Assembly (NCBI GenBank): GCA_904063045.1
Contig: CAJFCJ010000019.1
Coordinates: forward strand, 796,570-860,569
DNA from: Dimorphilus gyrociliatus
Taxonomy: Eukaryota > Animalia > Annelida
Reading direction: 5' to 3'
Length of the DNA stretch: 64,000 nucleotides
The position numbers and the translations under genes were made by a program. Within the stretch, counting starts at the first letter, position 1, and every line of letters begins with the position of its first letter. The notes under the pieces were generated by a model that was not told the origin of the DNA, ran no database searches, and worked only from the letters and a program-made list of their open reading frames with translations. Shown in pieces: positions 32,701 through 45,813 of this stretch.

Positions 32701-35700
32701 AAATAACTAAGGAGTATATTAAAAAAGTGCAATTCCCACTTCCACTCTCCTTCTCTCTCTATCTCTCTCTCTAACTCTCTCTAGCTTTCTCTTTCTCTGT
32801 TCTAAACCAAAAATTAATTCTTTTTTGAAATTTGATTATACTCTCCCTCCTTTATTTTCTAAACCCAAATGGAATAAAAGTAAAATATGAATCGCATTAT
32901 TATAATTGACTTTGAAACTATTTAGTTCGTTCTGGTCTATTGAATTAATGACTATTTTTTTTAAATAACACGAAAGAAAATCTCTATTTGCATTAATTAT
33001 CCCATTAAAACTCATATTTCATTCAGATATCTATTATATTCAATTAGATATTGCTTCCTCTATTGCAGAGGACTATTAAGTTGGGAATTTTGTCTTTATC
33101 TCAGTCCAGTTTTTTTCCTGAATCTGGGTATTAAAAATTTACCATCTTATCCATTTTGTATGTTAAGTCTACCTTACCTTTGTATAATAAGTTGATCAAG
33201 GTAAAATTCTAAACCTCTTTTGATATATATATATATTGTATATCTATGGCTGCAATACATAAATCCGGTAAAAAAAGAGGAGTGATGTTCTCAATAGAAA
33301 AGCATTCTTTCTAACGCTATTAAATATTGATTAAAAGTTGACACAGTACTAATATTTCTCATTTCCTTATTCGAGTACAGGAAAGTATATTTATAAGTAT
33401 ATATATATCTCCTGACATCCTGAACTCTTGTACTATGTGTAACAACCTCATCTCTTAAAAATTTATATATAGTATATATAGCAATATTATACACAAACAC
33501 TTAATTCATGTCAATACTTAAAAACTATTACTTAAGGATGAAATACGGAATCATTTTACTAAATAGTGACAGAGTAAGAATCATATGCACTAAATAGTTA
33601 TACATTGAAATGAAGAAATGCAAAAGGATAAAGGAAGCAACACAAAAAAGTTGACGTATATTAAGTGAAAAGAAAAACTGTATATATATATATAAATAAT
33701 ATTCATATTTGTTAAAAAAATGCTATAGAAATTAGAATATTATTAATATAATAATAATAATAATAATAATGAAATATTAACTAAATAACAGCTAGTAACA
33801 ACAGAATCGTCCACAAGGGATAGCATATGCCTAAATATAAAATAAAATTATAAATAGGACATGAGTGTTATCCCTCCTGAACGCTAGAAGTTTAACCGCC
33901 ACCTTAGGTCCGAACGCGATAATCTTCAATACACATTCGATAGAAAAAAGTATAGTGAAAGCCATATTTAGGTAACCAAGTATGCTGTTATAGCGTAATA
34001 AATCATCCGTCTCCTGTTTATAATACTGAAAACCAAGAAAAGCAGATAGAAACACTCGTGATCCTCTCCAACAATATTTGTCTATTAATATTGTTTTTGT
34101 TGAATATAATAAATAAATAATTGATTGAATTCAAGTTTTTTTTTGCATAACACGCGCAAAAAAATTGTGCAGATGGAGAAGAGAAGAACTCAGTAAATCA
34201 AAAATTCTAAGACTAAGAATAATCCTAATAACAATAAGATCATATATACTAATATATATATATATATATGGACATTTGTACTAAAAAATGCGAAGGAAAT
34301 CCGCCACCTTGCCATTTTACTCGTCTTACCCTAATGCCGAATGCCATCATTTTGAAGATACATTCGATGGTGAAAAGTACCGTAAAGGCTATATTCAAAT
34401 AACGGAGAACTTTGCTGTACGTATCTGATTGTCCATCCACCTGCACTTACATTTTGGGATAATCGGTTTGCATGGTATATGTTTGCATAATAGCATTATG
34501 TTAAGTGACAGGATATATAAATTTATGTCAAATCAATAATATAAGTGTAAAATAACCGTACATACCTTCATCATGAGAATTATGGTATTTAACGCAATCA
34601 TAACCATAATAAAGTACTCAAAAGGTGCCGAGACAACTATTCGCCAAATCCGATATTTAACTGATTGTTTGTTCTTGGGCATATAACGGCAAAGAGGACG
34701 GGCGTTAATGGCGAAATCGATACATTGTTTCTGTAAAACGTCTTATTGATTTTTCTGTCCTTGGTAAATTAAACATGTTGCGTATTACCTGGTTTTTATC
34801 AAGATCTTGATCGACCAGTTCATTTTCACCTTGTTCTTGGAATGTAATGATAATCAAAGCGACGAATATGTTAATAAAGAAGAAAGGAAAGACTATAAAG
34901 TAGACCACGTAGAAAATTGCCATTTCCATTCGATATCCGGGTGACGGACCCCGGTTCTCGTATGTAGAATCCATTGAGTGCTTTAAAACAGCAGGCCAAC
35001 CTTCACCAGTTTGCACCGTGAAAAGAGTCAGCATAGCAGCAAGAACATTGTCGTAATGAAAATCCCATCTATTCCATTTTCTATCATCTACACTCGGTAT
35101 ATTTTTATTCTTGTCATAAACAAAATATTGTCCTTGACATTCTGTCTTGGTATTTTTTGAAGCATCCGTACAATAGAAGAATCTCCCTTTGAAAAGTTGT
35201 ACGGCAATAACAGCAAAGATGAATTGAAATAAAAGGTAGACAATCATTATATTTAAAACATTCTTCAAAGAATTAACTACACAATCGAAAACGGCCTGCA
35301 AGGGGTAGTTAAGTATTAGAATATTTCATTGTTCCGTTACCCAGAAACTTTCTGGCAAACCTTTAGTTTAGGGACCCTATTAATTGTCTTTAAAGGTCGA
35401 AGTACCCTAAGGACTCTCAACGACTTAATGGTATTCAAATTCTTTCCGGCACTTGTGCTATCCCTGTAATAAGCAGAAAATGATACGAATATTAGTTTAA
35501 GTTGAGAATCTTTTTCCCTTCTCAAGTATTATCACTCTCTCGTTCTCATTAGTATTTATGCCTTGCCCAAACCGGAAATGAATAAAAAAAAATAAAAGAA
35601 ACAACGAATCAAAAACGAAAAAGCTTTATACTTGCAAAGTGTCAATAATATATTAATACATTAATTTTGAGAGTTTTATCACTTTTCCTTTCAGAAAAAA

Positions 35701-37871
35701 AACATTTAACACTTACGTAAAGATGAAGGCTACCAAGGCGCAAATTACTACAGTGGCATCCAATATATTCCATAGATCACGGCAATAGGAGCCCGGATGG
35801 AAAATTACGCCCAAATCGACCACCTATAAGAAATACCACCACCAGGTGCAAAGTGTAAGAATCATTGTTTATTCTTTTGTTCTTTTTTTTTGTTCGATAA
35901 TTTTCGCGCGCAAAAAAAAAAAAACCAATGTATCGGTTTTTTTGTCGTGTTATGTTTATTTTTAATTTTTATTTATAATTTAAACAAAAAGAAAAAAAAA
36001 GAAAAGAATTGAAGGTGACATGCTGGGCTTGTGCTAAATATTGGCGGTAGCGAACAAAAGAACGACAAAACTCATGCAAATTGGAGATACATAAAAAAAA
36101 TTAATAACTTACACAAAAGCGTACGCTGTAAGGGCACACACAACGACGGTAGCGTCGAGAACATTCCACAAGTCTCTGAAGTAAGACCCTGGATGAATGA
36201 TCATTCCAAGGTCTATGTTCTGTTCAATTGAGTGATAGGTGATATAGGAGATTAAAATAAAAAAAATTGTAAAATAAAAATGAAGCTTTTCTTTTGTTTG
36301 TTTGTTTGTTCTTTCCTTCTTTTGTTTTTTAAAAATATAACAAATTAAAATATTCAACAGCAAAAAAAAACTAAGGAGGAGGAGGAGGGAGAGTAAAAAA
36401 AATATTTAAAATGAAGAAAGATAGCAAATATAAGGAAATGGAGTAGAAAAAAGATGAATAATTAGAAACGGCGCAAAAGTTCTTTGTACTTCTTTGATTA
36501 AGTATAGAAAAAAAATTTTATTTTTTTTTTTCTACAAACCTTCAAGATCATCTCTACTGTAAAGACTCCAGTAAATACATAATCGAAGTAATTTAATATT
36601 TTATTTCTATAAGACTTCTCATCTACTGGATCTTCTGCTGCAAGTGCAATGGAAGACGCACAAATAACGATCATGATGAATAGATCGAAGTAGCGTAAGT
36701 TAACCACAAAGTGGCAAAAGCGTCGAATACTATATATGTATGAGAAAAAAATTGAAATTAATAGGATTAATTAAACTAAAGGTGGCACTACTCCCCGCCC
36801 ATTGGGAATATCACTATGCATTTTAATTAGCACTTACGGATTAGTTGGCCCGAAGATAAACATGGAGGAATAAGGCAGCATAGGTTTCGGACCAGTAAAC
36901 GTTTGTTCTCCCTCGCCTTCTTTTTCGCTTCCGTCGCTACCATCGTCTTGAGAGAGGGAAAGAAAAAAAATTGGTACCCGGCCGACGACAAGTTAAAAAA
37001 ATCTCTTACAGTTGCAAGAGTAAAAAAAACACACGCAGGAAAAAAAATACTCACCGCTCTCAGCGTCTTCTCTGGCTTCAGTCTCACTTTTTCCAGAGGC
37101 TTTCGCTTTGTCAATGTTACTCTTATTATTTGACGCCTGATCAGTACTGAAAGAGATGCTGTCATTGAACCGACGCTTAGCTTTCGAATCGTGCAAAAAA
37201 AGTAAAGTATTTTTACAAATATAACCTAATACCCCAATAAATTGGTTAATAAAATTAGAGTTTGTAGGCCTACAAACGTGCCTATACTAATTAATTTCTT
37301 CACCATTACGCCACATAATTTCCCTTGAAACAAGCCAATTCAATATAGCGTTGAGCTGAAACGTTTCCGATTAACGCCATTAACGTTTTACTCTTTTTTC
37401 TACTTTCTAATCTACGTGGCTGTAATTTTTTTCCAGACAAACTACGCCTAAAGAGTTCAATAAAGGAGAACAATATAGAACAATCATTATCCTAGCCGCC
37501 TACAGATATACAATGTATACAATATACACTGTAAAAAATATAATACGCTGTATATGTGGATATTATAATAAGCGTAGGAATACGTATAGTTAGATATAAA
37601 ATATATATACCTATTGACATATACATATATATATATAATAAACAATATAGTGTTGCGATCTTTAGATATGACGGTCTATCTATCTGTCTGTCTGTCTGTC
37701 TCTCCGTCTCTCTCCCTCTCTCTCTCTCTCTCTCTGCATATATTTATTTTTATTTATTCATATTTAAGTAAAGTTTGTGTATAAACTACTCATTCTAATA
37801 AGTATATATCTATTTATTAAAGTTATATATATATACAGCAATCCAGCATATAGTGTAGGTATACGAGTGTA

Positions 37872-37903
<32 letters not shown>

Positions 37904-40900
37904 CTAATATATATATGCGAGTGTATGCTGTTCCCAGTGAATTCGATTAGGATTGTTCGAAATCGATATATATGTTATACAGCCGTGCATCTATAAGAAT
38001 TTTTTTTTATAATATACGATATAGAAATTTAACACGCAGCGTTCATCAATTGAAAAAAATTGATAACTCACTAATTAAAGTTCCCAGTCTTAGGGTCTTT
38101 ATTGTTCTGCGGTGACGGTGGACAAATGTTCACCATAGGAGCTCCTCCTGCTCCAATTCTCATATGTGCTGGAGGAAAACTAGTTGGGAATTGCTCCCTC
38201 ATATCCAGTTGCGATTGTTCTTCTTTATTATTCTGATTTAAAAAACCGGAAATTAGTCGGTTAGGAAAGCTTTTGTACAAAGAACAAAAGGATAGATTCA
38301 GCCATTAGATGAAGAGTTTTAAAAAATTGCTAATTGGCTAAAAAAGAAGAGAACTCGTTAAAGCATGCGAACCGCCAGCGTTGAAAAGAGGAAAAAAAGT
38401 AGAAAATAAAGTAATTATTAATCGGATGTGCATTAATCAAAGCGTACTTCGACCTGTGCAACGTGAGAATGACTGTCAAATTGTTGGGCAACTTCGTCTT
38501 TCACCTCCTGCCGTCTCTAAAAAACACGACATAACCACTACTACAACTTTTGTTGGAAGGGGTAGGGAGATAATGATTTTGTTATATTGAATGATTATGA
38601 TTAAGGGCTGATATGCCATGCTAATCTACAATGATTTTAAGCCCATATAAACAAACCTTTTCTTCTTCTTCATCAGCTTCCTCTTCGGCAGCGGTTAATT
38701 CCTGAGCATTTGCCAAGTTATCGACGGCGATAGCCAAGAAAACGTTGAGCAGTGTGTAGTTGCCAAATAATACGAGAACGATGAAATATGAGCAATAGAC
38801 CATTCCTCCACCATGAATTCCTCCCTGAGACTGTATGCCGTTGTACATAACTTCGTTCCAATCTTCTCCAGTTAGTATTTGGAAGACTGTTAACAAGGCT
38901 ATAGGGAACGTATCGAAGTTACTAGAGGGTCTGCCTCCTGGAAAATTCCATTCTCCTCCAAATAGCTGCATCCCGAGTAGAGCGAATATAAGAATAAACA
39001 AGAAGAGAAGGAACAAGAGCGATACGATGGATCGCATGGAATTGAGCAATGATACAACGAGGTTCCTCAATGATGCCCAATACCTAATGCGAATTAGGAG
39101 AAAAAAATAATCGATTATACAAATTCGTTGCACGTTATTGCTAAACACACGCAATATTAATAGGGAAATATACGACGCATTGTAATAAGCGTTGTATAGG
39201 ATGTTTACTTATTCGATCGCTTAAACGATGCGTCGTTTCTTTTTTTATAGAAGAAAAAAATAAAAATAAAAAATTATAGAAGGTTTTTAAGTCACAACAA
39301 CAACCTGGTAACTTTGAATATTCTTAGTAATCTGAGGGAGCGAAGGACACTAATCCCGAAAGAAGTTGAGTTGAACTGGTTGTAGATAACTTCGATGATC
39401 GAACCGAATATTACCTGAAAACCGTGCTAATTTACAGACAACACTAAAGGGAAAATAAACCGTAGATTGTTTTTTATTTCATATTTTTTTTAAAGGGAAA
39501 GAGGCATCAATATGGTAATAGAGATTAGGGATTCTAATACAGTTAAGGGACTGTAAGTAAGGGAAGGTAGGTGCGCAATTCGCTAACGATGACGAAGATC
39601 AATTCGTTCTGTTATTTACAAAAGCTCCCGTCATCTTTAGACGTCCCTCTTGCTCTCTCTCTCTCTCTCTCTCTCTCAGGCTTTCTGTCTTTCTTTTTTT
39701 CTCTCTCTCATTCACTCACTCACCCAGTCACTCACTTACTCAGTCACTCATTCTCTTTCTCTCTTTCCCTCTCCCTCTCTCTCTCTCTAATGGTATTTGC
39801 CTTTTTCTCTTTCAATAGAGAAATTATCATTTATGTGAAATTTTTGAAAACACGGCAAAAAAATAAGTAACAATGTATGTTGTTGGTTTTGTTTACATGC
39901 AGAAAAGGGATAAAATAATGAAAGAAAGAAGACAAAGTTAAGAAGAAGATTGAAAAAAATAGCAATTATAGTAATAATAATAATTCATGCACAACACTTT
40001 GTCTGTGCACGCACCTCGTCACTTTGAATATCCTGAGAAGCCGTAAAGCGCGTAGCACCGACACGCCGAATGACGTGTCCGAGCGGAATTCCGACCAGAT
40101 CACTTCGAATACACTGCCCACGATGACCTAACGCGGTGCATATTTAATAATACGAATGTTTTTTGTTTGTTTGTTTGTTTGTTTTTGCTTAAGGAGCGAT
40201 AGAAAAAGGAGAAGAAGCATTTTAACCGTCACCGTTAGAAAAAGGTGATGAATGGTTGCAAAAAACCCTACATTTTTAGTATTATTGTTAGATATAGGCG
40301 TTGTTAAATAATGCAACATTTACTAGCGCATCGACGGACTATATTTTCACCATGGTAACGGTCCCAATGCGCAAAACGTTTGCCCGAATAGGCCAGATTT
40401 TTTTTCTATTACAACTTCTCTACTGAATATATATATATATATATACTTACCACACAGTCGAAGATATTGAACGAAGACTGAAAGTACATATGAAAACCAA
40501 GGCCGTACATTTTGAATATCACCTCAAATATGAAAAGACTGAGGAACACAAACTCTGCAAAGTCTGCAACGCGATATTTATGAATGAAAATTAGTTGAGA
40601 GTAAATCATTCTTTCCTTACATAGAAATTTTGTTAGCCATTCCGGTTGTCCGTAATGTTCGACTGCTACGCAAAATGTATTGAGAAAGACCAGCACTATA
40701 ACCAACCAATAAAACGTTTGGCACTTAACGATCCGTCGAATCGTAAATCTGTTAATAGTTTCCGATTAATTCGTTATCTAATCAAGGGGAATAAAAAGAA
40801 GAAAAATGTAAGAGCAGATCTTTCGTCATACCTAAACGATTTCTCAGCTCTCCAACATCTAGCGCAGCTTCCCTTATTCTGCTTAGATTTAACCCCGTAG

Positions 40901-43900
40901 CCAGGGCGAGAAAACGGACTACCACCCATGTCAGCAAACAATTCCTCGTCGTAGTCATCGGCTTCTAAGTCATCTGTATCTTTACCCTCTTTAATCCGTT
41001 TCATTTTTCTCGTAGCTGCTCTCCTTCGAGCTGTCAACGGAAAGATCAATTACTCACCCACAACATTAAAAACAGTCAGTATGAACTGGGTGGAATATAA
41101 AGGGGTCATCAGATGACGACGTTAAAAGCGTTAAATTTTCACCACCACGTGACCATGGCGTGCAGTGATTCATAAACGGTATACTGTATACTATATGCAT
41201 GTTTTACAAGTAATTGTGCTTGACCACTATATATTACGGGCGGTTCAAGGAGGACCGTTTAACAATTTGCTATAGTAAAGCCGGCGAGGCTTTTTATCAT
41301 AAAAAGTAGATATCAAGGACCAATCGAGTGAGAATTGTTTAAAAATTCGACTTAAGTGAAAATTGAAATATTAAAAAAGTAGTTTTTATATAAAGAAACA
41401 TAAATATATATTAGTATATTATATAAGCCATGTGTATATTTATATACAGTATATATAGTGTAGATATAGTAAATTGAATGATTCATATTTTCTCTATGAT
41501 TAAAATTCAGTATAATTCTATTCAAATTCAAAAGAAATCGGTTTTACTTTATTCTATATATACTTAGTCATATACAGCATACTTAATTTGTATGCATATA
41601 TAGATATCTGTATATAAATATAAACTGCATATGCGTTTCTGTATATATTAATATTATCAGAATCGATTTGTCCTCGTATAACTTATCTTCCAGACTTTAT
41701 TCCTTTTACATGACGTACTCTACATTCTATTCGGAGAAATCTACAATACTAGCCTTTACCTCTCTTTAAGCCACCAAATAAACCTTTTTCTATAATTGCG
41801 AATGAAAAGAATAGATTTAGAACGATTGTGCACACAACAATAACTATTAACATCATGTACAAAGCAAATTTTTTAATTGTTGTTATTATATTATTAGAAG
41901 ATCTTTATTCATTTTAGAAGCCTCTTTGTGAGAGGTTGAAAGAAAGAGTTAATGGGAACGATAGTGGGAAGGGAAAGCATTGAACCAATATAGTTAAGAA
42001 GAATTTAAATAGTAAGGGCGAGGAGAGGGAAGCAGAAGCGTAAGAAAACGATAATGATGATGAAGAAGAAGAAAAAGAAGAGGCTTAATTATTGGGAGAA
42101 AACGATTAATGATGGAAATATAAAGGCAGCGAAACAGAAAAAAAAAAGAGGGAAAGAAGGAGAAGAATCAGCAATAGTAGCAGCAAAAACGGCAGCAGTA
42201 ATAGCAGACGATGAGAAAGATTTTAAAAAGAATGAAGTAAAAAAAGAGAAAAAAAAGAAAGAAAGAAAAAAAAGATGTATGAGAATACGACTTGTATGAT
42301 AAAAAAAAAGATAGAAATAAAATATTCGCTTATTTGAAATACCTTCCATTATTTTCGCCTTATCCTCCTCGCTTGTCCGTTCTTCATTCAATATGACTTC
42401 CTCTGAGAATCGAAATGTCAAATGAGAAGGAGATAATTAGCCGAAGCTTTTTTCTATAATGAAACGCACCTGCTTTGCAGATCCATTCTAAATAACCATT
42501 TAGTTCTCGTTCAGTTTGCTGTTGCTTGCGTAATTTCAGAAAAGCTCGACGATTTTCGACACGCTCTCTTTCCTTAGCGAATTCCCTGTACGGAATTGTA
42601 TTGATTTTTTTAGTTACGCGTCGCGAATATATCGTGTAGCGCATTAACTATGGAGAAACCGCCTTTTTTTTTTCCTCTTTCTAAAAAGATGAAAAATAAA
42701 TGGAATAGGAATTGCCATCTTGTAGTTCGGAAATGTAAGTTAAGTGTATAAGGAGATCTTTTGTTATTCGCTGGAGGTTGCGGCATTGTATTGGCGCAGT
42801 GCAGTTGGCACAAACAAATCAATGAATGCGGCAGCTGAGTGTAGTTTTGCAGTTGGCCTATTTCGCAAGAGCGACACTCACCCACTTAAAACACCGAGAA
42901 CGAGATTAAGCATGAAGAATGATCCAAGAATAATCAGGGGGAAAAAGTAAATCCAAGTAAAGTTCGGTCCTACGGCATCATTCGTATAATAGAGAACGGA
43001 AGTCCAACCCTCCATAGTAATGCACTGAAAAACGGTCAACATAGCGAATCCTATATTATCGAATGACGTTATTCCGTAATTTGGCCCTTCCCAATAAGAT
43101 CGACATCTCGATCCTTCCGGACAAACAAAACCAGTTACAGACTTCTCTTTGCTGCTCGTCGATTGCATACAAGGTGTAACATTCTCTTCGCCCGCCAAAT
43201 CAAATTCATCTTCCATATGAGTGTTCGATGTATTTTCATATCTGCAGGCCGTGTGAAAAGCACCGCTGTAAAACTCTAGGCCTATGATAGCGAAGATGAC
43301 GATGGCGAAGAGCACCAAGAGGGCGATTTGAGCCAGCGGCGCCATAGCTCGGATGATCGATTTGAGCACAACTTGAAGACCTGTTTAAAGATGCGTATAA
43401 TTAAAGTGGAGAAAAATATGGCCCATATAAAGAGAATGAAGAACTTTAAACAAAGAAAGCACACAAGGTTCATTTGATAGGAAAACAGAAATTTTCCATC
43501 ACCCGATAACAACAGCGACATGCACGAAAAGTTATTAAATTCCGCTCGTATTTCTATTTCTTAGATAGATGAATTTATTGCATGCTTTAAACCACAAAAT
43601 GCTGTCATTTCTAATCATTTTTTTTTCTCTCCCTTCCGTCTTTCATTCTCGTGTTGTTTTTATGTTTTAAAATCCTTAATAAAAGTATAAAGACAAAACT
43701 AGTATTGTATCAATAACCCGCTAGATATATTTATACACTTGATAACCATTACAAAAGAAGATTGTTACATAAAAAAAAATACGGAATCTTTAAATGAAAC
43801 AAAAAAAAAGAAGAAAAAGAATGAAAAGAGACAAGAGAATTCGAAAGAAATAGAATTAATGCATATAATACAATTTTGTTTTTTTTTTTATTTGTTTGTA

Positions 43901-45813
43901 CAAGATCATTTAGAGAAGGAGGGAGAGAGATTGTAAAGATATTTCTTTTTTATTCATTTGTTTTTATTTTTTTAAAAAAAAAATAAAAAAAGACTTTCAC
44001 CCCTTCATGCAATTCCCTTTTGATTTATAAAGGTACCAACTGGGTATCCCAGACACCAGCTTGAGGGGTCTGAGGACTCGAATAGCTCGGAGTATTCTTA
44101 AATTAAATTTTTTACTATCGCTATCCAAAACAATAGTGACTAACCTAAAAGGGAAAATGAAAGGGGTAATGGTTGTGGAAGGTTAAAATACTAAACATAA
44201 AAGGGTGTATAATAGATACACGCGTATGAATAAGAATACAAAGTTATAAAAATAATAATAATAATCATCATCATTATAAAAAAATATCCGTGAAGACGTA
44301 GGTTGGAACTAGGGCTAAAGGTGTGGGTGGTGATGGGGGAGGGAAAAGGGGTTATAAAAACACAAGTGGAAAAAAAAACTGTATAGGACGACGTCGACCA
44401 CTGGATTGCTTACTTTCGAAGCCTGTCACCAGTTTGAGAGGCCTTAATACTCTGATAGCCCGCAGAGCAGCCTGATCAAACCTCGGAATGAAGAGGGAAC
44501 ACAGCCTGAAAACGTAGGAAGAATTTATACGTTATAGAATCGTTAGCACTTTTTTTTTCATCGTATCGATCATTGGTCGTCGGCTGACAGTTTGCTCTTT
44601 TCTCGATAAGGAGGTAAAAGTTTACTTGACATATTTTATTATTAACAATAATAGTAATAATAATAAGACCGCTATCATAATTATTATTCTTCCTATAATA
44701 AAAGGCTAGAGCATGCGAAAAAGAATTTTAACTCACCCGGTTACTACTACTATAAAATCCATTATATTCCAAACGTTCCTAAGATAAGCTCCTTTATGCA
44801 ATACGAATCCTAAAGCAACTATCTTCAGTAAAGCTTCCACGCAAAAAATTCCTAGAAAGTACACTTCAGTTTCCTCCTGCAGAAATTAGAAGGTACGTAA
44901 ATAGAGGGAGGAGAAAGAGAAACGTGTCAAAGAGCGTACCAATTGTATGGCAAGAACGGTCTTGTCCCCTTTCGGCAAATGTTCTTCGAGAGCCAAAACG
45001 ATACAATTGGCGATGATTGTAAGTAGCACCATATATTCGAAAGGCTTACACCGAAGTTAAGGTTAATTACAATAGAAAAATCGTAGTAAAATACTACATT
45101 GAGAGTATATATACAGTAAATTATGTATACATTTTATGAATAGTCTATATAGTCCAACTATAAAAAATGAAAATTATGTCTAGAAACGTAAGCGTTCGTA
45201 AGCGTCTAAATGTTCGTCTACAAACGGCCATGCATCTACGAATGTTTGTACACAAAATCACCAGACACACAATATTATAAATGAAATATTAGAATGAAAA
45301 CACGCTTTGTGCATCAAACGCATGTCATCAAATATATATAAACGTATATTGTAGGGGTCTAGGAGCAAAAAGAGAAAAAAACAGGATAGATAAGAATAAA
45401 TAGGCCAATAGAATGGGCGATGGTATGAATATTTTAAAAAGAAGGCTGAAACTGCTAGCGTTCGATCGATATCGGACGGCGAGCGCTCTGCAGAACTTAA
45501 GCTTCTTTTTATTTTGAAAAACGTTTAACGGATAACCGCGGAGAGTAATTAGAACGTTATGCGAGAGGCAAGCCAATCGATATACACTGCAACAGGTGCG
45601 CGTTTGAAAATGACACGTTCTGGAATGCATGAATTACCCAAAACTATATCCACATATATGTGCACATGCCGTATCTATACATGAATGTTCTGGCTATAAA
45701 TATATACAAAGCTTGTATAAATTGAATATATATATATATATATATACACTTAGTACATAACTGTATATACATATTAACCTTTCCGCTCCTCATATACACT
45801 AAACGTAAGTAGA

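What the first reader, a model, noticed from the sequence alone, without database searches (positions are those of the whole stretch)
44414..44505. Alternative IS4 exon neutralises the outermost gating charge
Exon b has the canonical [23 protein letters not shown] (5 basic S4 positions). Exon a reads [23 protein letters not shown]: R1 is replaced by Ala, the S3-S4 loop is 4 residues shorter, and the S4-S5 linker start changes from SGIP to TGFE. Established: S4 R1 neutralisation shifts voltage dependence and can create gating-pore (omega) currents. Inference: splicing switches this Cav2 between different activation ranges.
Basis: partly seen in the sequence, partly recalled or inferred. Interest (0 to 1): 0.7.

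Follow-up and report, generated by a model that had tools for sequence, protein, structure and literature searches.

The report
Ancient alternative Cav2 voltage-sensor exon
A synaptic-type calcium channel gene of a small marine worm has two interchangeable exons for its first voltage sensor, and the odd one, which lacks the outermost positive charge, is an old conserved exon shared with molluscs, flatworms and echinoderms that I found described in no paper.

Summary
On the minus strand, 44414-44505 is a 92-nt exon with good AG/GT splice sites ("a"). The canonical 104-nt exon "b" lies 269 nt downstream at 44041-44144. Each keeps the frame alone. Both together give a stop right at the a/b joint, and skipping both shifts the frame, so they are mutually exclusive by arithmetic.

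Exon a puts Ala where human Cav2.1/2.2/2.3 have the outermost IS4 arginine (R192 of Cav2.1, the migraine residue). Its S3-S4 loop is 4 residues shorter, and the turn reads TGFES instead of SGIPS.

Exon a is not a local oddity. The same 92-nt exon class, always non-basic at R1, sits upstream of the canonical exon in three other invertebrate genomic contigs. It is spliced into annotated Cav2 proteins of flatworms, molluscs, an orthonectid and two echinoderms. Snail, urchin and crinoid RefSeq isoforms carry either a or b. Synonymous sites are saturated while the protein is kept.

The insect IS4A/IS4B exons (known from Drosophila) keep R1 and group apart.

Expression in this worm and any gating difference are untested, because the reads tool was lost to a filter.

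The parts
44737..44876 (-). Constitutive exon for IS2-IS3 (140 nt), ending ...MDFIVVVTG with two bases of the Gly codon; donor gtgagt
   Evidence: tblastn to mollusc Cav2
44414..44505 (-). Exon a: alternative 92-nt exon for the end of IS3, a short S3-S4 loop, IS4 without R1 (Ala) and the S4-S5 turn TGFES
44145..44413 (-). Intron between a and b (269 nt). It is long enough to be spliced, so exclusivity is not steric
   Evidence: One search found only low-complexity A/T inverted repeats, with no convincing docking/selector pairing
44041..44144 (-). Exon b: canonical 104-nt exon with five basic S4 positions and SGIPS; weak donor gttggt
44006..44011 (-). UGCAUG (Rbfox-type element) 30 nt downstream of exon b's weak donor
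   Evidence: also present at +23 after b in L006, absent after b in L001 and L005, so only partly conserved
42882..43380 (-). Constitutive exon for the S4-S5 linker, IS5, pore loop and IS6 (499 nt), starting (S)[12 protein letters not shown]

Best explanation
Exon a is this worm's copy of an ancient alternative version of Cav2 exon 4, and it is mutually exclusive with the canonical exon b.

Shown:
- The two exons lie in tandem (a first), and each alone keeps the frame.
- Both together, or neither, gives a premature stop. Only single-inclusion mRNAs can encode a channel, and the others would presumably be removed by nonsense-mediated decay.
- The a-type class is 92 nt, has Ala/Pro/Ser instead of R1, usually has Gln just before it, and usually has Glu in place of the Pro of the S4-S5 turn.
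- This class is conserved under purifying selection in spiralians and echinoderms.
- It is used as an alternative to the canonical exon in annotated snail, sea-urchin and crinoid isoforms.
- It is the only form annotated for one flatworm Cav2 gene, so it should make a working channel.

Inferred:
- Choosing a gives voltage sensor I four instead of five S4 charges, a tighter S3-S4 hairpin and a different cytoplasmic S4-S5 turn.
- VSD-I is the sensor that follows pore opening, inactivation and G-beta-gamma inhibition in human Cav2.1 and Cav2.2. The a isoform should therefore differ in activation or inactivation voltage, kinetics and/or G-protein modulation, and possibly in where the channel is placed.
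- The direction and size of the effect cannot be predicted from sequence.
For: Anatomy and frames.

R1 column: one search aligns Ala12 of exon a with R1 of human Cav2.1, Cav2.2 and Cav2.3. In one search, 13 of 13 a-type exons have A, P or S there.

Orthologous a exons: all are 92 nt with AG/GT ends in L001, L003, L005 and L006. The order exon3-a-b-exon5 is kept in the window, L001 and L005, and a lies upstream of b in L006.

Selection: 17 synonymous versus 6 nonsynonymous codon differences between the window and L001. Across five genomes pS is 0.67-0.99 and pN is 0.13-0.34. a and b within the window share only 58% of bases over 22 codons, so the duplication is old.

Spread: one search gave about 25 a-type representatives. 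Searches show a-type spliced to LQVVLKS in Schistosoma, Echinococcus and other flatworms, Intoshia, Pomacea X8 (the other 14 listed isoforms are b), Pinctada, Biomphalaria, Lytechinus X7 (14 b) and Antedon X5 (14 b).

Tree: a-types form one split at 93/89.

Functional weight of VSD-I: PMC12019389, PMC11389781.

Precedents: fly IS4 splicing changes activation voltage and active-zone localisation (PMC11828482). R192Q is the outermost IS4 residue (PMC9864995).
Against: A splice-junction search of JGI contigs found nothing. No a-containing fragment of this species appeared in the protein searches.

RefSeq isoforms are computational models, and I could not see their read support.

R192Q has no effect on voltage dependence in oocytes (PMC9864995), so loss of R1 alone may do little.

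AlphaFold models of snail domain I with a or b are of low confidence (pLDDT 69 and 71). They show the S4 helix starting at almost the same column, so no gross structural change is predicted.

The crinoid b exon also lacks R1 (Asn), so R1 is not indispensable in this family.
Confidence: 0.72

Rival explanations
1. Exon a matters mainly through the cytoplasmic S4-S5 turn (TGFES versus SGIPS). On this view it changes trafficking, localisation or coupling to partners rather than the activation range. The loss of R1 would then be secondary.
For: The turn is the most class-specific conserved part of a-type exons (GFE or GIE in 11 of 13). The insect alternative exon also changes this turn (G to R/K). 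In Drosophila the choice of IS4 exon decides active-zone localisation (PMC11828482).
Against: The non-basic R1 column is even more constant (13 of 13). Lytechinus a keeps IPS and Pomacea has FQS. The fly work also found a change in activation voltage, so the two effects need not be alternatives.
Confidence: 0.2
2. The a/b pair is the same ancient duplication as Drosophila/insect IS4A/IS4B, with the upstream exon remodelled in arthropods, so this is simply the annelid member of the fly system.
For: The position in the gene is the same, the alternative exon lies upstream of the canonical one in both, and the S4-S5 turn is altered in both (PMC11828482, PMC12370356).
Against: Insect IS4A keeps R1 and Leu before it, has SRIPS/SKIPS, is 33 codons long like its partner, and carries more positive charge, not less (PMC11828482). 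In the exon tree it groups with tick and ant canonical exons at 86/73, away from the a-type split at 93/89 (only 30 columns). No arthropod a-type was seen among 3758 full-length candidates.
Confidence: 0.2
3. Exon a is an unused relic in this species: a conserved-looking duplicate that is no longer spliced in.
For: There is no direct transcript evidence here.
Against: The reading frame is intact, the polypyrimidine tract and AG are strong, and the donor is a consensus gtaagc. The class-defining residues are kept, and the pN/pS pattern is as for the other species. A silent exon would have decayed over the time that saturated its synonymous sites.
Confidence: 0.06

Closest known systems
Drosophila cacophony IS4A/IS4B mutually exclusive exons (Peixoto 1997, not held; Bell et al. 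eLife 2025, PMC11828482; PMC12370356)
   Same: A single invertebrate Cav2 gene with two tandem, mutually exclusive exons encoding IS4 and its flanks. The canonical one is downstream. In the fly the choice changes activation voltage and synaptic localisation.
   Different: The fly and insect exons are both 99 nt (33 codons). IS4A keeps R1 and has one more positive charge (Arg/Lys in the S4-S5 turn; seen here in moth, butterfly and ant models). Here the exons are 92 and 104 nt and the upstream one has lost R1. The sequences group apart. I could not retrieve the Drosophila exons themselves.
Human CACNA1A R192Q (familial hemiplegic migraine type 1)
   Same: It neutralises the same residue, the outermost basic residue of Cav2 IS4 (PMC9864995).
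   Different: It is a disease point mutation in a gene without this alternative exon. Its effects depend on the expression system. The a-type exon also changes the S3-S4 loop and the S4-S5 turn.
RefSeq/GenBank Cav2 isoforms carrying the a-type exon (Pomacea canaliculata XP_025112114.1, Lytechinus variegatus XP_041481260.1, Antedon mediterranea XP_071948425.1, Schistosoma japonicum KAH8859404.1)
   Same: The exon class is the same: 30 codons, non-basic at R1, spliced to LQVVLKS or LQIVLKS.
   Different: These are database models without a published description that I could find. This window adds an annelid and the genomic a-then-b layout.
S3-S4 loop splicing in vertebrate Cav channels (as discussed in PMC11828482 for Cav2.1 exons 24 and 31; Cav1.1 exon 29 in PMC4886277)
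   Same: Alternative splicing next to an S4 segment that tunes voltage sensing.
   Different: Those are cassette insertions in repeats III and IV that leave the S4 charges untouched. Here a whole S4 exon of repeat I is exchanged.

Membership tests
Cav2 (N/P/Q/R-type) calcium channel alpha-1 subunit | Four repeats, each with an S4 segment, Glu in each pore loop (EEEE), and a C-terminal IQ region | tested here: met
   tblastn hits along the minus strand from 46205 to 30004 cover repeats I-IV. The pore loops read TMEGW, TGEDW, TGEGW and TGENW, and the pre-IQ/IQ region is present.
Cav2 (N/P/Q/R-type) calcium channel alpha-1 subunit | Closer to Cav2 than to Cav1 or Cav3 | tested here: met
   exon a matches Cav2.2, Cav2.1 and Cav2.3 (E 2e-4 to 6e-4) ahead of Cav1 (0.025 or worse); the best tblastn totals are to mollusc 'type A alpha-1' proteins. 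Exon 5 alone does not discriminate.
Cav2 (N/P/Q/R-type) calcium channel alpha-1 subunit | I-II linker AID with the QXXER G-beta-gamma motif | tested here: met
   the linker reads ...[18 protein letters not shown] at 42584-42471, which contains QQTER. The motif is as defined in PMC11828482.
Insect cacophony IS4A/IS4B pair | Two tandem mutually exclusive exons at the IS3-IS4-turn position | tested here: met
Insect cacophony IS4A/IS4B pair | Both exons of equal length (99 nt, 33 codons) | tested here: not met
   The exons here are 92 and 104 nt. The fly lengths are from PMC11828482.
Insect cacophony IS4A/IS4B pair | The upstream exon keeps all S4 charges and has one more positive residue | tested here: not met
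   Exon a has Ala at R1 and no extra basic residue in register. Insect IS4A reads ...[23 protein letters not shown].
Insect cacophony IS4A/IS4B pair | Exon a groups with insect IS4A in a tree of exon peptides | tested here: not met
   a-types form their own split (93/89), and insect IS4A sits with arthropod canonical exons (86/73). The alignment has only 30 columns, so this is weak.
R1-less 'a-type' Cav2 exon 4 of spiralians and echinoderms (class defined in this report) | 92 nt, phase 2 to 1, lying between exon 3 and the canonical exon | tested here: met
   Window; L001, L003, L005 and L006
R1-less 'a-type' Cav2 exon 4 of spiralians and echinoderms (class defined in this report) | Non-basic residue at the R1 column, Gln before it, and Glu in place of the turn Pro | tested here: met
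   the window has Q-A and GFE. The R1 column is A, P or S in 13 of 13 a-types.
R1-less 'a-type' Cav2 exon 4 of spiralians and echinoderms (class defined in this report) | Actually spliced as an alternative to the canonical exon | tested here: inconclusive
   Both forms are annotated in Pomacea, Lytechinus and Antedon. For this species no reads could be laid.

The most novel reading that the evidence does not exclude
The bilaterian ancestor already made two kinds of Cav2 channel from one gene by swapping the S4 exon of voltage sensor I. One was a canonical synaptic form. The other was an R1-less form with different threshold, inactivation or G-protein sensitivity, and it is the natural counterpart of the human migraine mutation R192Q. 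Vertebrates lost the exon and diversified by gene duplication instead. Insects replaced it with an independently duplicated pair. In this worm all four voltage sensors may be switchable in this way.
Probability: 0.3. Interest if true: 0.75.

Novelty: new variant of a known kind. Interest (0 to 1): 0.55.

Why it matters
Mutually exclusive IS4 splicing of Cav2 is treated in the papers I could search as a feature of the Drosophila cacophony locus, described only as absent from vertebrates.

The evidence here points to a different and much older exon class. It is shared by annelids, molluscs, flatworms, an orthonectid and echinoderms, and it removes the very residue mutated in familial hemiplegic migraine.

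VSD-I is now thought to drive opening and to mediate G-protein inhibition in Cav2 channels. A natural, conserved R1-less VSD-I is therefore a ready-made probe of how that sensor sets channel behaviour. It is also a lead on how animals with one Cav2 gene diversify their presynaptic and non-synaptic calcium currents.

It also bears on annotation. Several insect gene models wrongly join both exons, and many invertebrate models show only one.

Tried and rejected
- Two local scripts used the whole window file only as a BLAST subject on the closed machine.
- A search for the exon3-a and exon3-b junctions in JGI metagenome contigs found nothing, which is uninformative.
- A 64-aa typed query could only see short proteins. 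It gave the first two a-type hits but no spliced fragment of this species.
- I looked for competing RNA pairings that could enforce exclusivity. Only A/T-rich low-complexity repeats turned up, so I make no claim.
- The Drosophila exon sequences were not obtainable. Peixoto 1997 and Smith 1996/1998 are not held. The sequences are not in the text or supplements of the 2025 papers. A peptide text search gave nothing. I used mis-joined moth, butterfly and ant gene models instead.
- AlphaFold models of snail domain I with a or b were of low confidence (pLDDT 69 and 71, pTM 0.42 and 0.44) and showed no clear difference. I give them little weight.
- I considered a recent duplication or gene conversion between a and b and rejected it, because they share only 58% of bases over the common 22 codons.
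- I did not verify the species. Earlier scan notes name Dimorphilus gyrociliatus. The RNA runs holding the stretch are labelled coral metatranscriptomes. I first took this to mean a cnidarian and then dropped that reading, because the protein is closest to mollusc Cav2.

Full report
**What is at the coordinates**

The gene lies on the minus strand. Read in that direction, 44414-44505 is preceded by a polypyrimidine tract and AG (ttcctacgttttcag|G) and followed by a consensus donor (A|gtaagc). Its 30 whole codons read [30 protein letters not shown].

The exon upstream (44737-44876, 140 nt) ends ...[11 protein letters not shown] with two bases of the Gly codon. The next large exon (42882-43380, 499 nt) begins with two bases that complete Ser and continues [12 protein letters not shown].

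A second exon lies 269 nt downstream of exon a, at 44041-44144 (104 nt; cccttttag|G ... A|gttggt). It encodes [34 protein letters not shown].

**Mutual exclusivity**

Both exons have a length of 2 modulo 3 and the same phases. In one search, exon3+a+exon5 and exon3+b+exon5 are open. Including both produces TAG as the first full codon after the a/b joint. Skipping both gives a stop 48 codons on.

The intron between them is long enough to be spliced, so exclusivity is enforced at the level of the reading frame, presumably with nonsense-mediated decay. That last step is an inference. I found no convincing competing RNA pairing.

**Which residue is missing**

A sequence search of solved structures aligned exon a without gaps to [21 protein letters not shown] of human Cav2.2, Cav2.1 and Cav2.3. 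Ala12 of exon a falls on the first Arg. [quoted passage not shown] Another review numbers it R0 (PMC3372090). No basic residue stands three positions further out in exon a, so its S4 carries R2, R3, R4 and K5 only.

**The gene is a Cav2**

Repeats I-IV, four pore-loop glutamates and the IQ region are found along 46205-30004. The I-II linker has the QXXER motif (QQTER). Exon a matches Cav2 structures ahead of Cav1. The N-terminal third is closest to mollusc "type A alpha-1" proteins.

Earlier notes of this scan name the genome as the annelid Dimorphilus gyrociliatus. I did not verify that. The RNA runs that hold this stretch are labelled coral metatranscriptomes, which would fit a small worm living on coral or in aquaria.

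**Exon a is an old, conserved exon class**

A 64-residue probe across the exon3-a-exon5 joints found two short ORFs that read through a-type exons in other genomes. Their contigs show 92-nt exons with AG/GT ends:
- L001 encodes [30 protein letters not shown].
- L003 encodes [30 protein letters not shown].

In L001 a canonical exon (…GFDLRTLRAVKVLRPLRLVSGIP, 107 nt) follows, and then exon 5.

Against L001, exon a differs at 17 codons synonymously and at 6 nonsynonymously. Over five genomes synonymous sites are saturated (pS 0.67-0.99) while pN is 0.13-0.34. Flanking intron is at background identity. Within the window, a and b share only 58% of bases over their common 22 codons, so the duplication is old.

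**How far it reaches**

The length limits of the word search hid full-length proteins. I therefore ran the exhaustive profile search with the three a-type exons. It returned about 25 a-type representatives.

Most are ORFs reading through the exon on genomic contigs. Four are spliced into annotated proteins:
- Intoshia linei
- Schistosoma japonicum
- Hymenolepis diminuta
- Antedon mediterranea isoform X5

A region search with the Schistosoma protein ranked every a-type cluster representative above all canonical ones among 3758 full-length candidates. These were many flatworms, Pomacea canaliculata X8, Pinctada imbricata, Biomphalaria, Lytechinus variegatus X7, Antedon X5 and Intoshia. No vertebrate, arthropod, nematode or cnidarian appeared. 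Only cluster representatives are visible, so this absence is weak evidence.

Cluster members show both forms within one gene:
- Pomacea: 1 a, 14 b
- Lytechinus: 1 a, 14 b
- Antedon: 1 a, 14 b

The flatworm gene, and the listed Biomphalaria models, show only a. This argues that an a-type channel works on its own.

Two more genomic contigs keep a upstream of b. In L005, which is mollusc-like, the full order exon3, a, b, exon5 is visible. L006 has only the two exons. All five genomic a exons are 92 nt.

In a table of 34 exon peptides the R1 column is A, P or S in 13 of 13 a-types. It is R in the canonical exons, except in Antedon b, where it is N.

**Relation to the fly**

Drosophila cacophony has mutually exclusive IS4A/IS4B exons. 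Both are 99 nt and differ at 13 residues, and IS4A has one more positive residue. IS4B is needed for the sustained high-voltage-activated current and for active-zone localisation (PMC11828482, PMC12370356).

I could not obtain the fly sequences. However, four insect gene models (Colias, Mythimna, Choristoneura, Camponotus) wrongly join both exons and so display them. The upstream exon reads …[23 protein letters not shown] (SKIP in the ant). It keeps R1 and adds Arg or Lys in the S4-S5 turn, which matches the published "one more positive charge".

So insect IS4A is not the a-type. In a 30-column tree the a-types form one split (93/89), and insect IS4A sits with tick and ant canonical exons (86/73). 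This favours a separate origin, but weakly.

**How it probably works**

Three things change together in sensor I:
- One fewer outer charge.
- A loop 4 residues shorter here, and up to 12 shorter than b in other species.
- The cytoplasmic turn changes, with Pro replaced by Glu.

In human Cav2.2, VSD-I activation resembles pore opening and is the sensor most strongly inhibited by G-beta-gamma (PMC11389781). In Cav2.1, VSD-I seems to drive opening directly and is linked to voltage-dependent inactivation (PMC12019389). Metal binding at an extracellular site shifts Cav2.3 gating (PMC3289959 abstract; that this site lies in repeat I is from my own knowledge and was not checked). R192Q shifts activation and inactivation negatively in HEK cells but not in oocytes, and a cited study reports reduced G-protein inhibition (PMC9864995).

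On this basis I expect a-containing channels to differ in voltage range, kinetics or G-protein modulation. The fly precedent adds a possible effect on localisation. All of this is inference.

AlphaFold models of snail domain I with a or b are of low confidence. They place the start of the S4 helix at Pro (the R1 column) in a, and one residue earlier in b, with loops of 6 and 8 residues.

An omega current is the least supported part. The residue may lie outside the constriction (PMC3372090), and most a-types have Pro there.

**Regulation**

Exon b has a weak donor (gttggt) with UGCAUG 30 nt downstream. L006 has one at +23, but L001 and L005 have none. This is a lead only.

**Novelty and limits**

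I found no paper describing this exon class outside the insect pair. The library lacks most subscription journals. The exon is already present in public isoform models.

I rate it a new variant of a known kind. The anatomy and evolutionary claims are solid. Expression here and function are untested.

Noticed in passing
window 40015-40127 and 39305-39414 (minus strand): A second tandem exon pair, for IIS3-S4 (…[18 protein letters not shown] and …[18 protein letters not shown]). The exons are 113 and 110 nt, both 2 modulo 3, each after an AG and before a gt, so they are also mutually exclusive by frame.
   Followed up: partly
window 36121-36324 / 35725-35823 and 34327-34443 / 33897-34031 (minus strand): Further duplicated exon-like hits for IIIS2-S3 and IVS1-S2. 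All four voltage-sensor domains appear to have a candidate alternative exon, as another note of this scan says. Boundaries and frames were not checked.
   Followed up: no
P0327, P0328, P0333, P0337, P0334 (Colias, Mythimna, Choristoneura, Camponotus gene models): These public insect Cav2 models join both mutually exclusive IS4 exons in series. They contain two IS4 segments in a row, which is an annotation error that happens to display both exons.
   Followed up: partly
P0095-P0108 (Antedon mediterranea isoforms): The crinoid's canonical-type exon reads GFDFNTLRAVRVLRPLK, with Asn at the R1 column. Both of its IS4 exons therefore lack the outermost charge.
   Followed up: no
P0026, P0111-P0121, P0125, P0127 (flatworm Cav2): One flatworm Cav2 gene is annotated only with the a-type exon ([31 protein letters not shown]) across trematodes and cestodes. 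It may be a constitutively R1-less Cav2.
   Followed up: partly
one search run list: The RNA runs that hold this stretch are labelled coral metatranscriptomes from several studies. The animal, or a close relative, seems to be a common passenger in coral samples.
   Followed up: no
P0062 (short ORF from the profile search): Another Cav2-like IS4 exon reads …[23 protein letters not shown]. It has Gln at the R1 column but a canonical SGIPS turn, so it may be a different route to an R1-less sensor in an unidentified organism.
   Followed up: no
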